Source of the DNA: Oculina patagonica
Taxonomy: Eukaryota
Length of the DNA stretch: 64,000 nucleotides
Direction of reading: 5' to 3'
Assembly (NCBI RefSeq): GCF_052425735.1
Contig: NC_135765.1
Coordinates: forward strand, 29,450,001 to 29,514,000
The notes below the pieces were generated by a model. It was not told the DNA's origin. It ran no database searches and saw only the letters and a program-made list of their open reading frames with translations. A program made the translations under genes and the position numbers. This document shows positions 30,814 through 38,162 of this stretch, piece by piece. The stretch's first letter is position 1. Each line of letters opens with the position of its first letter.

Positions 30814-32013
30814 ACTCAGTCGGTGAATAGGCAACCTCCATTGAGGAGTTGAATAATGAATGCAAATATTTCACAAAGTAAGAAGATCAGCAGCAACCAA
30901 ATGCAGATTAAAGCAGCTGGGTAAAAAAAGAACGAAACTAAATAAAAACATATTTCAATTATAACTAATATAAACTAGATACCTGATTTACTTTGCTGTT
31001 GTCCACTTTGCACAGAGCATTCTATACCAAGTTCAACAAAACTTGACTGTAGCCAGTAGGTATTCTTCATTCATTGCGGCTTAATGGCAGAATATAACAC
31101 TACCTAAAAGAAGGATTGACATAATTTAATCTATTAAAAACCACCACACTAGCTCTAATTAATGGCCCTGTTTATAAAAAGAATTTATAAAAAATTCTGT
31201 CTTATTTAATGGATCTCATCAAATATAATAATATTAGCCTCTTTCGTTTATACACTCAGTGTAGTGACCCTTCCTTCCTACAATGGGATATTTAGCTTTT
31301 CTACTTGGAGATTTCTTGTTAAGGTGGCTCGAAACAGTTGTTTCCTTTTTTATGAACAATTTATTTGGAATTAAAACAATTTTACTTTAACAAAGCAGAT
31401 CATCCTTACTTCTCACCCTAAAATAAAGGTGATAACACCCTAACAATAGGTTGTAAAAGAATCGTTGTTATCGTTGCCATGGCAACGCTAATGGCGACTT
31501 GAGTCAGGCCTTTCAAGAGACATATCTTCGCTTTTCTTGAAAATGCGACGGTAAATTTTTTTAAATTTTGCATACAGTCTTTGACTTTTCCATTCTCCCT
31601 GGGAGTCAACTTTAAAAAAATTCTGTCAGAAATTTTACCGAAAAACCCTTCTTTTTAAAAGTCACAATTATTTTCTTTTTCTGTTGACAGAATTCTTTAA
31701 AAATCGCCTGAAACATAATTTGTATGGAGTTACGTGAACATGCCAAAAATTAAAAAAATTTACCGAGCGGAAGCGGAAATATATCCGCCAAAAGTTTTAA
31801 AATTCCAAAAATATCGACACGACAAGATAGGCAACTGCGCATGCGCTACGCGCTATACACGCGCGAGACACGCGGGTCACGCGGAAATTCTATATCTGTT
31901 TATTTCATGGCTCAATTCACGTAATGTAGTTTGTCCCGAGCGCAGTCAACGGCTTTATTTTGGCTAAAAAGTGTTACTCTGCGGATGAATAGTGTCTTTT
32001 AATGGCTGCTGTA

Positions 32014-34214
32014 TCATCTGCTTTCGAAATGATGAACAATTTTGGCTAAAATCGCCGTTTGTTTTGTTCCTCGTGGCGTGGATCGAATAGCTCCTGTTGG
32101 CGCTCGGCTCAAAACTGCCACCAATGCTTCTTTGCCACCATGTGTGTACAGATGCTGAAGGTCCTCGTAAGACAAGCCACTTTCGGCAATTTTTTGAATG
32201 AGGCTCTCTTTTATGACGCTGTTGTCATCTTGTGTTAATAGCTTGTCTTGGAACGTTTGTATTCGGGCGAAACGTTCGTCCAAAAACATCATATCTTCGA
32301 AAGCGAAGGAGATCGGTTTCAGATTACACTTGTTTATTACGTCTTCTTCAGTCAACATCAACGGGGATTCGTGAAGTACGCGACTTAGAGCACGAATATC
32401 CTCCAAAGCGTCATGTGCTTGAAAATCTTCACCAAAGAGGGCTTCGAAAACAGCTGGAAGGTTAGCTTTGCAAGGTTTTCCTCCTGGATTGATCATGAGC
32501 GACGTGTTCCCAGCTTTGATCAGTGCTCTCACAAGGTAAAGGCTGTCTGCAAAATAAACATTTAGCGGAGCAAGCTTTTCTTTGAACTCCTGTCCTGCAA
32601 ATCTTAATAGAGTGGGAGTGTCAAAAGAAGAAGTATTGTGTCCAATCAAGATAGTGTGATGTGATGTGCTACGTGTACAATTACTGAAGAGAAAATGTAT
32701 GAAATCTGAAAGACACTCGCTTAGAGGAACCGACATCACAGGAACGTTTTCTTTCAGCAATGTTCTCTGGCCATTTATGATTTTAACCGTCAGTTTGTTT
32801 ATTCTAGATGCATGGCTGCTGATGTTGCTTGTTGGTAATGTGTAGCTGTTGAATGTGTTCCCTCCTTTTGTAATAGCAGCAAGTTGACAAATCTCTGCAT
32901 GTTTACCTAAACAAGTTGTCTCTATGTCGAAGACAACAAATTGATATTTAGTCGAGCTGCTGTAACGAACTTTAGGTTGCTTTGGTCGTTTTTTAAATGC
33001 TGGTACCATACTTTCATATTCCAAAAATTTAGTTTTTGGCAAAGATAAAGTTGTCTGAAGTAAGTCTTTGATAGGATTATTTTCTGTGATGTCCAAATTT
33101 AGGCCAACACTGGTTTGGTATGTGGTGCCCTCCCTGGCCTCACTTCTGCTGTTTGCACTCAGTTTATCACGATGAAGTTGTGATCGACGTTTTTTGAACG
33201 AGGTCGAAGATTTTCTTATTTTATCTTTCAAATACTTCTGATCTTCTGCTTTGTTGTGGGCGATGCAGTGGTCACCAGGCTCTACACTTACTTCTCTCAA
33301 AGTTTGGCAAACGTAGTCTCGCCCTTCATTTGTTTGACAAACCCCACAAGCAACCCTAAAATCGTTACTTTCACTACCACCGTAAAACCTTATTTTTGGA
33401 TTTTTTGACCCAACAACACTGTTAAAAGCTTCGTTACGTTGAGAATTTGTTGCTGGGGCAAGTTCTTTAACAACAATATCTGTCGAATAGTCATCAAAAA
33501 TTGCATTCAAGGCTGCTTCCAATGCATCACCATACAAATCTTTACCAAATGGGAGCTCACTATGACGATAACTTGTGGGGTCCTTTTTAAAGTGACACCA
33601 TGATTCATTGCATTTATCATGTTTACCAAAGCTGTGAGGCACAATGTTTCTGATTGCTGATTGTAGTGAAGCTTCATTATCTTTGTTTTGTGCAACACAG
33701 TACCCAAAACATTTGCCCAAGTAATTTATAACTTTTGCCGATAGAGTGGAGCAACCAGGAAATTTTTTTTCAGATTTTAGCTTGTAAAGCCGTGAAATCA
33801 AAGATCGTTTAGTATGAATAACATCGGATTGTTTTTCCACAGCATAGGGCACTTTTTCTCTGATGTGGGAATGGGTAGTCGTGTCATCGTCGCCAGTGTA
33901 AACATTGTATTTAATTTTGTCATTTGTTGCCCTCTGAAATAAATCAACGGCAACATCTGGTTCCATGCTTTTCGATGACCCCTCGTGGTTTTTGCGACAA
34001 TCATGACTTTTTGGCTTTTGACCCTTTTTTGAAGCATTAGCACAGATCCTGCACATTTTACACCTGGTGCCAAAGTCAAGGATTTTTCCAGTAGATATTC
34101 CCATCACTGCACCATGCCCAGTGTTGGAACTATGTCCACCGTTGCGTCTCTGCCATGCCATATCATATGACACAGCCACTCCAATTAGGCCATTTTCATC
34201 AGCAGCACCTCCAG
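32014..34214 (-). CDS. Transposase last exon: DDE core ('Mutator-like'/Kolobok type) fused to DEDDh 3'-5' exonuclease and PML-C-like helical tail
   Basis: SYDMAWQRR, CxxCxxC...HDCRKNHEGSSKSME, GDDD and SQRNEAFN motifs, then VFDIETT, GHNTSSFD, HDALED. Acceptor ttacag|ct at 34214; open to the stop at 32014. Confidence 0.88.
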
Positions 34215-34670
34215 CTGTAACATAAACATTAAATAAACATGTAGGTAGGTCATATACCTTGTGTGTTATTTTATTGACTGTTATGTTTTGAAGCAAAGGC
34301 TGTTACCATTTGTATTAATTTCTTTGTCTAGAATTTGAATGTGTCCTGGTATATCATGATGATACAGGTTCCATTTATTTCATTCAAGGAAAATCCTCTG
34401 TATTTTTAAAAACTTGTCACTAGTGCTTGCCTTCTTTGAGAAGTCACCCCTTTTTGAAGGGCACAAAACTATGATTAAATAAAGTTAGAGTCTGAAGTTT
34501 TTCCTGGAAAGTATGAGAAATTAAATGCACTGTTGAAAATAAAAGCCATTTATTGTTTTAAGGGGAACTTCTGCAAAGACATATTTTTAGTTTTGTGCAA
34601 AACAGAATATGATTATAGCCTGTCTTGTTAGCAAATGGGACCTGCTAGGAAATGGAAGGGACTCTGTTAC

Positions 34671-36157: not shown

Positions 36158-36506
36158 CGGCGTGACACACGTTCTCCTCTTCTTGGTCGTCACAAGGAGC
36201 AGAGGAATCCTCTTTCCCAGCACAGTTTGCATTATTTGCTGAAGTTGTTGCAAACACTGCTCCTAAAACGAGCCCAAAACAAACTCCCACGCTCACGTAT
36301 CCAGAAGTAAACTTCTGCGATGTGGGGCTGAGAAGTCCATCGTGTTTTTGAAACGATTCACATGAATTTCTGACGCTTGACTTTTTTTCTTTGTAAAATA
36401 CATTACAACTAAAAGACGAAGAAAGTGTACTTTGCCTTATTACATTTGAAAAACACAGTCTACTCGACCGACGCAAAATTAAACGCGACACGAAAGCGGC
36501 CGCCAT
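35865..36506 (-). CDS. Overlapping upstream ORF in the transposon resembling a mitochondrial presequence plus TM anchor
   Basis: aaagATGGCG start; R/S/L-rich N-terminus lacking acidic residues for ~39 aa; hydrophobic VSVGVCFGLVLGAVFAT followed by an acidic patch. Confidence 0.45.
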   Translation of the reverse strand: MAAAFVSRLILRRSSRLCFSNVIRQSTLSSSFSCNVFYKEKKSSVRNSCESFQKHDGLLSPTSQKFTSGYVSVGVCFGLVLGAVFATTSANNANCAGKEDSSAPCDDQEEENVCHADEFRDASAARFKFRSIFDAEKIRKVQTKRGSVKSYTKHESRKSKKKTDDGVGRRQPARIKKSDKRKFGKPVVDKCKSMLPFTSCHEITLRPVYQACV

Positions 36507-38162
36507 CTTTGTTTATTTTTTTTTTTCGTCACGAACTTTTAAAAGTCCCGCGTCTCCTGCGTGCGCGCGTGTAACCGCGCGTGTTCTCGCGTGTATATTG
36601 GAACCCAGTTTTCGCGCGCCAAAAAAACTATTTCGAGCCACCTTAACTTACTTGTATAGAAAAAACATTGCCATTGCAAAGATACACATTCAACACTGTC
36701 ATAGGTGATAGTCAATGTAATAAGTTTGCATACACAGCTGCATACAGTGTCTAAAATGGCATGAATTACAAGTAGAGCGAACAATTGTGTTTTATAAAAT
36801 TACTCAAAATAATTAACTAAGATAGTTTTATGTGGAAATAAACTGAGTTTTTTTTTTGTTTCTACTAAGGTGTGGTAAAAACGTGTCAACGCAAGAAATT
36901 CGCAACGTAACGATCTCTTAGCGTATTCGTCCACGACCCTAAAATAGTTCGTTCAAACGAATTCCAACAGCGAGTAAATAAGAATAAATAGATGAATTAA
37001 AAAAACTAAAACACTAAGTTTAGCTGGGAGTTTAAATAAAAACATTAAGTCATTAACAGCTCATGAATTAATCGGAGGCGAAGCGGCCGCAGTTTTTCGT
37101 ATTATTATCCAACCGCGTAGTACATGTGTAAGCATATAATTACAGATTTTCACAAAAAACATGGACTTAGTGTATTCAGTAAAGTCAAAGTTTGTTACCT
37201 CATATTTGAAGTCGGAGAATGCTTGTCAATTCACAGCAATTCAGCAGGGCAAAGCTTTCAACCAGCTCATGAATTAATCGGAGGCGAAGCGGCCGCAGTT
37301 TTTCGTATTATTATCCAACCGCGTAGTACATGTGTAAGCTATAAATTATAACTTACTCCAGCACCACCGACCTTTGAATTATCTGCGAAGGTCTATTTCA
37401 GCCTTTTCCATCCGTGTAGCTATTGACACTTCTTTTTTCCTTCACTTCAGTTAATTGCGTTTAGCTCAATTACTAGAGCTGGTCAGCCGCCGAAACGGTA
37501 GAAACTCGCTCGCTCTCCACCTGTGCCATTTTTTCGGATCTCCCCGTAAGCCCTTATCGTTTGCCATAACTTCCATGATGTGTAAAGCCTTTAGACGGGG
37601 TAGACCGAGAAATATTTACGTAGACATTTCTTTTTCCTGCTCGGTTTCTCCTTGTGCTTCGTTCAGCTTTCAAACTGACCGGGTTGTTCACTTTGTCCTT
37701 CATGTAAATCTAACTGGACTGACCATGGAAAAGTACTTGCGCCCGCGGACCAATAGCAATGCTATCACTTGGTCAGCGGTCAACTTCAAAAAAACACGCG
37801 ACCTTGACTAGTTCTAAACCTGAGCCCGCGATATGGTCATGTGATACTGGTCAGCGGATACGTTGTTTTGACAGCTGTCAATTGACCATAAAATGGATGT
37901 CCAATATCAAAGATCTTAGTCGATTACCTCACTCATTTCTGGTTAACGAAGGAGGCAGAAGATTGTCTCCCCTCCCCCCTCTGCTTGGGTTGCCTTGGGA
38001 CTCCCCTCCCCCTCCCCGAGAGTCTGTACGCGCGGCGGGCGTACGCACCAAATTTTTTCGGCCTCCTGGGTTTACATCAATTCTCTCGTACCCGCATTAC
38101 CCATGGTGCTCCGCTCCGCGCGCTGGCGCGAAAAAGCTGTGGAAACACTCGTCTATCGACTC

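What the first reader, a model, noticed from the sequence alone, without database searches (positions are those of the whole stretch)
31323..36642. Kolobok-type transposon whose DDE transposase is fused to an intact DEDDh (PML/TREX1-like) exonuclease, inside an NLR intron
Seen: TTAA TSD, 17-bp TIRs, and a 4-exon gene whose last exon runs without a stop from the DDE core into DIE/D/HDALED exonuclease motifs and a helical tail (KIAESGLSYEDL...GG...RGTK) resembling the PML C-terminal region. Established: TREX1 and PML-like DEDDh exonucleases degrade cytosolic or retroelement DNA and dampen cGAS-STING, and PML-like exonucleases have been linked to transposon origin. Inference: the element may carry its own nuclease to process ends or destroy immunostimulatory DNA, i.e. 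anti-immune cargo, and may represent the mobile source of PML-type exonucleases.
Basis: partly seen in the sequence, partly recalled or inferred. Interest (0 to 1): 0.8.

Follow-up and report, generated by a model that had tools for sequence, protein, structure and literature searches.

The report
KolobokD transposon with Plex9-like exonuclease
This is a copy of an already described kind of jumping gene (KolobokD) in a stony coral, whose cutting enzyme is fused to a DNA-trimming exonuclease of the same family as fish Plex9 and the tail of the human PML protein. That family may therefore have come from such transposons.

Summary
A 5,320-bp element (31323-36642) has TTAA duplications, GG...CC inverted ends and a 4-exon minus-strand gene. 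Its last exon runs from a Kolobok-type DDE transposase into a DEDDh exonuclease with all catalytic residues, then a SAM-like tail (Pfam PML_C).

The fusion is not new. Kojima & Bao 2022 (PMC9587614) named this lineage KolobokD and reported it in cnidarians, molluscs and arthropods.

New details:
- This copy is probably defective, because a 250-bp MITE splits exon 2.
- It sits inside another young ~5.5-kb repeat. At least 29 paralogous empty sites carry a single TTAA.
- A second family in the same genome has four ~99%-identical TTAA-flanked copies with the same fusion.

The exonuclease is specifically Plex9/Exu-like rather than TREX1-like: profile E 1.7e-31 against Plex9.1, about 1e-4 against TREX1. 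In a tree, teleost Plex9 falls among transposon-borne exonucleases, but an AU test does not exclude a sister position (p 0.17). I found no paper linking PML or Plex9 to Kolobok.

The anti-immune role is untested. End-processing during transposition is my preferred, inferred mechanism. The scan holds no earlier report of this fusion on other DNA.

The parts
31319..31322 (.). Left TTAA target-site duplication
   Evidence: In at least 29 paralogous copies of the surrounding repeat the two flanks abut with a 4-bp overlap, i.e. one TTAA.
31323..31343 (+). Terminal inverted repeat at the 3' end of the gene; begins GG
   Evidence: (I20). It is 19/21 identical to the other end. The same first 8 bases are used by a second family in this genome.
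32014..34214 (-). Exon 4. It holds most of the transposase core, a basic linker, the DEDDh exonuclease and the SAM-like tail. The stop codon is at 32014-32016.
   Evidence: The acceptor is confirmed by contig joints 34214->34671 in runs X1 and X6.
33424..34170 (-). Transposase catalytic region. Candidate first D lies in SYDMAWQ (34150-34170). A CxxC...HxC zinc motif lies at 33985-34062. GDDD lies at 33877-33897, a Cys/His cluster at 33592-33639 and QRNE at 33424-33444.
   Evidence: Invariant or nearly invariant columns in the 14-sequence alignment A2; coordinates; PF20700 E 5e-91 for the spliced protein.
32341..32946 (-). DEDDh 3'-5' exonuclease domain. Exo I (FDIETT) is at 32914-32946, Exo II (HN..FD) at 32614-32649 and Exo III (HDALED) at 32386-32421.
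   Evidence: The AF2 model has pLDDT 92. Best solved match is Plex9.1: Z 23.4, rmsd 1.9, 31% identity.
32017..32340 (-). Helical SAM-like tail (Pfam PML_C over 32020-32223)
   Evidence: PF25244 E 2.7e-7 here and down to 1.7e-20 in relatives. The Exuperantia EXO+SAM structure aligns across model residues 8-327, and PML aligns across 15-326.
34215..34670 (-). Intron 3 (GT..AG on the minus strand)
   Evidence: It is skipped in contigs of X1 and X6. It is absent in the second family, whose 880-codon frame is continuous here.
34671..35024 (-). Exon 3. It holds the N-terminal part of PF20700, including the CPFC half of a split zinc motif. The NCBI model starts at the ATG at 34965.
   Evidence: The phase-1 acceptor is conserved with the second family.
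35481..35830 (-). Exon 2, broken by a nested MITE. As it stands the frame reads ...QNCETRRR-stop.
   Evidence: Its peptide resembles exon 2 of the second family and the N-terminus of P0069. Contigs of run X6 join 35495 to 35746/7, i.e. a copy without the insert.
35496..35745 (.). Nested 250-bp MITE with its own inverted ends (AAACCCGC...)
   Evidence: more than 40 genomic matches; word depth 1000-3000; loose ends at both borders.
35957..36232 (-). Tentative exon 1. The coding part runs from the ATG at 36232 to a GTAAGC donor after 35957.
   Evidence: By eye it resembles exon 1 of the second family (RD.SGRF...KRKL...KR.TR.L), but tblastx found nothing significant here. A contig of X1 ends at 35957.
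36622..36642 (-). Terminal inverted repeat at the 5' end of the gene; ends CC on the + strand
36643..36646 (.). Right TTAA target-site duplication
27323..31322 (.). Left part of the ~5.5-kb multicopy repeat into which the element inserted
   Evidence: more than 30 copies at 92-97% over query 3324-7323.
36643..38130 (.). Right part of the same host repeat
   Evidence: more than 25 copies at 96-99% over query 1-1488.

Best explanation
This is a copy of a KolobokD-lineage cut-and-paste DNA transposon in the coral genome, most likely Oculina patagonica. It inserted at a TTAA inside another young repeat. That repeat lies between the HEPN exon and the NACHT-LRR exon of an NLR gene.

Its four-exon gene encodes one polypeptide: an N-terminal zinc motif, a Kolobok DDE transposase, a basic linker, a DEDDh 3'-5' exonuclease and a SAM-like domain. 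The EXO-SAM module belongs to the same protein family as fish Plex9, the PML C-terminal domain and insect Exuperantia, and here it keeps all catalytic residues.

Shown:
- the anatomy and the insertion;
- conservation of the fusion across cnidarian, mollusc and insect elements;
- the family relationship of the exonuclease.

This particular copy has probably lost autonomy, because a MITE splits exon 2 and its zinc motif. The downstream part is still open, and RNA-like contigs of near-identical copies exist.

Inferred (about 50%): the exonuclease acts in cis with the transposase on 3' ends of DNA made during excision, integration or donor-gap repair. Other Kolobok lineages likewise carry a lambda-exonuclease-like nuclease, a RecQ helicase or a His-Me nuclease.
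For: Transposon identity and mobility:
- TTAA duplications and GG..CC ends.
- At least 29 paralogous empty sites with a single TTAA.
- Truncated copies and a 348-bp derivative that keep the same ends plus TTAA.
- PF20700, RNase_T and PML_C lie in one open frame.

The fusion is lineage-wide:
- A second family has 4 copies, 99.2-99.7% identical, each TTAA-flanked, with all exons open.
- More diverged fused copies occur in the genome.
- The same architecture is found in Montipora, Acropora, Actinia, bivalves, a thrips and Hymenoptera.
- The lineage is described as KolobokD (PMC9587614).

The exonuclease is conserved and Plex9-like:
- DEDDh residues are invariant in 17/17 and 14/14 sequences.
- Of 23 listed differences from a related transcribed copy, 15 are synonymous and 8 are not.
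- Model pLDDT 92; Plex9.1 Z 23.4, Exu Z 24.2 over EXO+SAM.
- Profile E 1.7e-31 to Plex9.1, 1e-13 to Exu, about 1e-4 to TREX1.
- Plex9 and gar PML-CDE are proven Mg-dependent exonucleases (PMC10123124).
Against: - No biochemical or genetic test of the exonuclease in any Kolobok exists. Its role in transposition is an inference, also made by Kojima & Bao.
- I could not compare the transposase with Repbase KolobokD references.
- The Pfam model that matches is named 'Mutator-like', so placement in the superfamily rests on the TSD, the termini, the zinc motifs and the accessory domain.
- This family has only one full-length copy in the genome, and that copy is interrupted.
- The runs that show splicing are only guessed to be RNA, and the joint has 28 letters on its shorter side.
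- The upstream exons are modelled from weak similarity.
Confidence: 0.85

Rival explanations
1. Anti-immune cargo. The exonuclease mainly destroys excised or abortive cytosolic transposon DNA, so that the host's cGAS-STING-type sensing is not triggered. It would have little role in the chemistry of transposition.
For: The closest characterised relatives (Plex9, gar PML-CDE, TREX1) degrade DNA, and in vertebrates they restrict L1 or dampen sensing (PMC10123124). The domain is catalytically intact and conserved.
Against: There are no data here. The domain is covalently fused to the transposase in every family seen, which fits action at the transpososome better than a free cytosolic scavenger. 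Other Kolobok lineages carry end-processing or repair enzymes with no link to immunity.
Confidence: 0.15
2. The direction is the reverse of the reader's idea. An ancestral Kolobok captured a host Plex9/Exu-like EXO-SAM gene once, and vertebrate PML-CDE/Plex9 and insect Exu are ordinary vertical descendants of that host gene, not domesticated transposon parts.
For: The AU test does not reject fish Plex9 lying outside all other ingroup sequences (p 0.166). Many EXO-SAM proteins have no transposase on the same predicted protein (59 '-ES' rows).
Against: - In the coral genome every strong, full-length EXO-SAM match lies beside a Kolobok transposase match.
- The ML tree puts teleost Plex9 inside a clade of 67 rows (99/91) together with 22 transposase-linked sequences from molluscs and insects, away from the cnidarian clade.
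- By the cited paper, PML and Plex9 appear only in jawed vertebrates. In these searches Exuperantia turned up only in insects. The transposon-borne module spans cnidarians, molluscs and arthropods.
- Many 'no transposase' rows come from short contigs or partial models.
Confidence: 0.4
3. The locus is a domesticated host gene rather than a transposon copy.
For: It is the single full-length copy of its family. Spliced, expressed-looking contigs exist in several runs, with an excess of synonymous differences.
Against: - Intact TIRs and TSD.
- Insertion into a repeat whose copies are 97-99% identical, so the insertion is recent.
- Exon 2 is broken by a MITE.
- Truncated and deletion derivatives with the same ends lie elsewhere.
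Confidence: 0.05

Closest known systems
KolobokD lineage of Kolobok DNA transposons (Kojima & Bao 2022, Mob DNA 13:24, PMC9587614)
   Same: TTAA duplication; 5'-RR..YY-3' termini; DDD/E transposase with an extra CCHC zinc motif after the first D; a DEDDh (DnaQ-type) exonuclease downstream of the transposase. The lineage was reported from cnidarians, molluscs and arthropods, and similarity to Exuperantia and TREX was noted.
   Different: This is a new family in a new host. The paper does not mention the SAM-like tail, PML or Plex9. This copy carries a nested MITE in exon 2.
Zebrafish Plex9.1 (PDB 9MRC/9MRD) and teleost Plex9/'trex3' genes
   Same: It is the best solved match by sequence (E 1e-14 for the single sequence, 1.7e-31 for the profile) and, for the EXO domain, by structure (Z 23.4, rmsd 1.9, 31% identity). 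The DEDDh residues are the same. It shares a clade that is separate from TREX1/2.
   Different: The fish proteins examined are stand-alone host genes of about 210-370 aa. They lack a transposase and, in those examined here, lack the SAM-like tail.
PML-I C-terminal domain (CDE / PXL; PMC10123124, PMC13659232)
   Same: EXO plus SAM-like two-domain arrangement. Pfam PML_C matches the tail. AlphaFold PML 605-848 aligns over model residues 15-326.
   Different: PML has an N-terminal RBCC/TRIM part and, in amniotes, a dead active site. No RBCC is present here and the active site is intact. Similarity to human PML is detectable only by fold and Pfam profile.
Drosophila Exuperantia (PDB 5L80)
   Same: It is the only solved structure covering both EXO and SAM-like parts of the model (Z 24.2, 279 residues aligned; profile E 1e-13).
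   Different: Exu is a catalytically dead RNA-binding host protein, and no transposase is attached.
TREX1/TREX2
   Same: DEDDh fold (Z about 20-21) and 3'-5' DNA exonuclease chemistry.
   Different: The sequence relationship is only marginal (E about 1e-4). TREX1/2 form the outgroup in the tree (99/99) and have no SAM-like tail.
KolX of Kolobok0 as the source of the P2X7 ballast domain (same 2022 paper)
   Same: It is a precedent for a Kolobok accessory domain being recruited as the C-terminal domain of a vertebrate host protein.
   Different: It involves a different domain and a different Kolobok lineage. It is an analogy only.

Membership tests
Kolobok superfamily / KolobokD lineage | [quoted passage not shown] | tested here: met
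   TTAA lies on both sides. A single TTAA is present at 29 or more paralogous empty sites. The four copies of the second family are all TTAA-flanked.
Kolobok superfamily / KolobokD lineage | Termini 5'-RR ... YY-3' (unlike piggyBac) | tested here: met
   The ends are 5'-GGTGGCTCG ... CGAGCCACC-3'. The criterion is taken from PMC9587614.
Kolobok superfamily / KolobokD lineage | [quoted passage not shown] | tested here: met
   PF20700 E 5e-91. SYDM, GDDD and QRNE, together with the PH..G.H..C...WC cluster, are invariant or nearly invariant across 14 sequences.
Kolobok superfamily / KolobokD lineage | Second (CCHC) zinc finger just downstream of the first catalytic D | tested here: met
   CKMC...HDC lies at 33985-34062 and is conserved in alignment A2.
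Kolobok superfamily / KolobokD lineage | DEDDh (DnaQ) exonuclease encoded downstream of the transposase | tested here: met
   It lies in the same open exon and is conserved in all relatives examined.
Kolobok superfamily / KolobokD lineage | Transposase groups with Repbase KolobokD references in a tree | not testable with these tools
   No Repbase sequences are available. The supplement text holds no 'KolobokD' entries.
DEDDh exonucleases, Plex9 / PML-CDE / Exu subfamily | Exo I D-x-E, Exo II D and Exo III H-x4-D motifs | tested here: met
   D24, E26, D126, H195 and D200 of P0001:505-831 are invariant in 17/17 sequences.
DEDDh exonucleases, Plex9 / PML-CDE / Exu subfamily | EXO fold followed by a SAM-like helical domain | tested here: met
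   pLDDT 92. Exu 5L80 aligns over residues 8-327 with Z 24.2. PML_C matches 11 of 14 relatives, best E 1.7e-20.
DEDDh exonucleases, Plex9 / PML-CDE / Exu subfamily | Closer to Plex9 than to TREX1/2 | tested here: met
   Profile E 1.7e-31 against about 1e-4. The ingroup is split from TREX with 99/99 support.
DEDDh exonucleases, Plex9 / PML-CDE / Exu subfamily | Mg-dependent 3'-5' exonuclease activity | not testable with these tools
   This needs an enzyme assay.
PML (TRIM19) orthologue | N-terminal RING, B-box and coiled-coil (RBCC) | tested here: not met
   Pfam finds only the transposase, the exonuclease and PML_C.
piggyBac superfamily (the other TTAA-targeting group) | piggyBac-type transposase and CC..GG termini | tested here: not met
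   No piggyBac Pfam family matched. The termini are GG..CC.

The most novel reading that the evidence does not exclude
The EXO-SAM module carried by KolobokD transposons may be the source of several host proteins. These would be vertebrate PML exon 9 and Plex9, insect Exuperantia, and a decapod eEF1-gamma(GST)-EXO-SAM fusion, each arising by separate domestication of a transposon-borne exonuclease. It would parallel the proposed origin of the P2X7 ballast domain from Kolobok KolX.

The ML tree supports this for teleost Plex9 and for the decapod fusion. The AU test leaves a sister relationship open. PML proper and Exu could not be placed in the tree.
Probability: 0.4. Interest if true: 0.75.

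Novelty: new member of a known kind. Interest (0 to 1): 0.45.

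Why it matters
As a transposon, this is a further family of a lineage described in 2022, so the fusion itself is not a discovery.

What may matter is the family link. The PML/Plex9 literature treats the C-terminal exonuclease of PML as a jawed-vertebrate invention of unknown origin. The Kolobok paper, for its part, did not notice PML or Plex9. Here the transposon-borne module is the closest invertebrate relative of Plex9, shares the EXO-SAM layout of PML and Exu, and is catalytically intact.

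This makes the origin of PML exon 9 a testable question. It also offers natural, active versions of a fold that is dead in human PML and in Exu.

The second family in this genome has four near-identical open copies. It would be a practical system for asking what a 3'-5' exonuclease does for a cut-and-paste transposase.

Tried and rejected
- One-off capture or chimeric annotation: rejected. The fusion recurs in at least three diverged families in this genome and in many other animals.
- TREX1 membership: rejected.
- piggyBac: rejected.
- The first two homologue searches found only cnidarian-like relatives. A third search, seeded with hits that share Plex9-like words, reached teleost Plex9, molluscs, insects and crustaceans.
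- Human PML PXL was not found by sequence in the PDB copy at E<=1. It was seen only by fold in AlphaFold models.
- PML proper, gar PML-CDE and Exu sequences could not be brought into the tree, because no tool gave them an id.
- AU test for Plex9 nested within the transposon clade: not significant (p 0.166).
- tblastx found no significant conservation of the 5' 1.6 kb between the two families, so exons 1-2 rest on short motif similarity and splice-site logic.
- The look-up of encoding contigs had no record for the NCBI protein, so the NLR gene model could not be read.
- The supplement search for KolobokD names found nothing.
- Poly-A raw reads (X20) gave only 10 reads, too few to show strand or transcript ends.
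- The 213-aa ORF 35865-36506 has no Pfam match. It lies in a different frame from the one that resembles exon 1 of the second family.

Full report
**What is there.** The window matches Oculina patagonica: an 831-aa NCBI protein of that coral is 100% identical to the spliced product. At 31323-36642 lies a 5,320-bp element. It is flanked by TTAA (31319-31322 and 36643-36646) and has inverted ends beginning GGTGGCTCGAAA, 19/21 identical.

On the minus strand, a 760-codon open frame (32014-34296) matches four Pfam models: PF20700 Mutator-like transposase, RNase_T, Exu_RNase_H_like and PML_C. A second frame (34645-35019) holds the N-terminal part of PF20700.

**Gene model.** Contigs of two public runs skip 34215-34670, which is GT..AG on the minus strand. 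This agrees with the NCBI model. The runs' type is only guessed to be RNA.

Upstream, exon 3 starts at 35024 behind a polypyrimidine-AG acceptor. That acceptor is conserved, in the same phase, in a second family of this genome.

Exon 2 (35481-35830) encodes a peptide resembling exon 2 of the second family and the N-terminus of a 913-aa relative. It is split by a 250-bp MITE (35496-35745), and the frame stops five codons into the insert. Contigs of one run join 35495 to 35746/7, so copies without the MITE exist. In those copies the exon carries a CxxC that pairs with the CPFC of exon 3.

Exon 1 (about 36232-35957, GTAAGC donor) is tentative.

So the four-exon model is reasonable, but this copy most likely cannot make the full-length protein. 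NCBI's model starts at an internal ATG in exon 3.

**Insertion and mobility.** The 600 bases on either side of the element belong to a repeat of about 5.5 kb (27323-31322 plus 36643-38130), with more than 30 copies at 92-99% identity. In at least 29 of those copies the two flanks abut with a 4-base overlap. These are empty sites with one TTAA, which is the signature of a TTAA-duplicating insertion into a young repeat.

Other pieces of the same family are present:
- a left-end fragment (89% identity) and a right-end fragment (97.6%), each ending in the inverted repeat plus TTAA;
- a 348-bp internal-deletion derivative with both ends.

A second family has four copies of about 5,060 bp, 99.2-99.7% identical. 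Each is TTAA-flanked, with ends beginning GGTGGCTC. Exon 1, exon 2 and an 880-codon last exon are open in all four.

Further diverged copies carry the same fusion. No full-length EXO-SAM match in this genome lacks a neighbouring transposase match.

**Context.** A HEPN_DZIP3 exon (21044-21724) and a NACHT-LRR exon (41603-43474) lie on the + strand on either side. Segments at about 38.3-41.1 kb and the NACHT-LRR exon recur in at least 15 paralogues on the same chromosome. 'Inside an NLR intron' is thus plausible, but I could not read a transcript or a gene model.

**The exonuclease.** In 17 relatives at 28-67% identity the Exo I (D, E), Exo II (D) and Exo III (H, D) residues are invariant. The same holds in a 14-sequence full-length alignment that includes mollusc and metagenome sequences.

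Of 23 listed differences between this copy and a related contig, 15 are synonymous.

The AlphaFold model of the module has pLDDT 92. Structure comparison gives:

| Match | Z | Notes |
|---|---|---|
| Exuperantia EXO+SAM | 24.2 | aligned over model residues 8-327 |
| Plex9.1 | 23.4 | rmsd 1.9, 31% identity |
| TREX1/2 | about 20-21 | |

AlphaFold PML models (human 605-848, mouse 618-860) align over residues 15-326.

By sequence, a profile of the module scores E 1.7e-31 against Plex9.1, 1e-13 against Exu and about 1e-4 against TREX1. PML_C matches 11 of 14 relatives, with a best E of 1.7e-20.

**What is already known.** Kojima & Bao (Mob DNA 2022, PMC9587614) defined KolobokD as a Kolobok lineage encoding a DEDDh exonuclease. 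They found it in molluscs, arthropods and cnidarians, noted similarity to Exuperantia, TREX and ERI1, and suggested that it degrades DNA intermediates from the 3' end during transposition. They also give the Kolobok criteria: TTAA, RR..YY termini and a CCHC finger after the first D. All of these are met here.

The fusion is thus a known kind, and this is a new family of it.

The same paper does not mention PML. The PML/Plex9 papers (PMC10123124, PMC13659232) do not mention transposons. Literature searches for PML with Kolobok, or with DEDDh and transposon, found nothing relevant.

**Is the transposon the source of PML-type exonucleases?** The module's relatives are numerous: 5,045 clusters at E<=1e-3. 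Named ones come from anemones, corals, bivalves, a thrips, Hymenoptera, decapods, an isopod, a hemichordate and teleosts.

I built a tree of 143 EXO domains (196 columns, LG+C20). It gave three results:
- The Plex9/Kolobok group separates from TREX-like outgroups with 99/99 support.
- Four teleost Plex9 proteins form one clade (99/94).
- That teleost clade sits inside a 67-row clade (99/91) that also holds 22 transposase-linked sequences from molluscs and insects. The coral elements fall in other clades.

This topology favours recruitment from a transposon. However, an AU test does not reject a tree with Plex9 outside all other ingroup rows (delta lnL 34, p 0.166). PML proper and Exu could not be included. 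I put the domestication reading at about 0.4.

**Mechanism.** The shown facts are that the domain is fused, intact and conserved.

I infer that it trims 3' ends of DNA made by the transposase or at the donor gap. I prefer this because the domain is always covalently attached, and because sister Kolobok lineages carry other end-processing or repair enzymes.

An immune-dampening role like that of TREX1 is possible. Nothing here supports or excludes it.

Noticed in passing
window 35496-35745: A 250-bp MITE with its own inverted ends is nested in exon 2 of the transposase gene. The family has more than 40 genomic matches at about 85% identity and very high depth in public contigs. It is absent from related copies in run X6.
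   Followed up: partly
window 27323-31322 and 36643-38130: An unclassified repeat of about 5.5 kb hosts the Kolobok insertion. It has more than 30 copies at 92-99% identity and carries about 91-bp internal tandem and inverted sub-repeats. Two of its ORFs (30042-30620, 37759-38214) have no convincing Pfam match.
   Followed up: partly
G000:C1:36702339-36704223: In one paralogous copy of the host repeat the two flanks are about 1.9 kb apart and 27 bases are missing. This suggests a different insertion at nearly the same site.
   Followed up: no
window 41438-43430; G000:C8:29.51-30.14 Mb: The NACHT-LRR exon and several upstream short segments recur in at least 15 paralogues at 83-92% identity on the same chromosome, forming a tandem NLR cluster. 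A HEPN_DZIP3 exon (E 1e-61) lies upstream at 21044-21724.
   Followed up: partly
proteins P0229 (Procambarus clarkii) and P0234 (Homarus americanus): Decapod proteins annotated as eEF1-gamma isoforms combine GST domains with an EXO plus PML_C module. In the tree they nest beside a transposase-linked sequence (P0254), which suggests a separate host fusion of the transposon module.
   Followed up: partly
window 32490 and 36178: All three contig runs lack 6 in-frame bases at 32490 relative to the window. Part of run X6 lacks 1 base at 36178 in the 5' region, where two long frames overlap.
   Followed up: no
G000:C9:22.31 Mb, C6:7.68 Mb, C6:12.92 Mb, C4:41.74 Mb (loci L061-L064): Four copies of a second KolobokD family, each about 5,060 bp, are 99.2-99.7% identical and have all exons open, so they look recently active. 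One copy has a Cys-to-Trp change in the N-terminal CxxC.
   Followed up: yes
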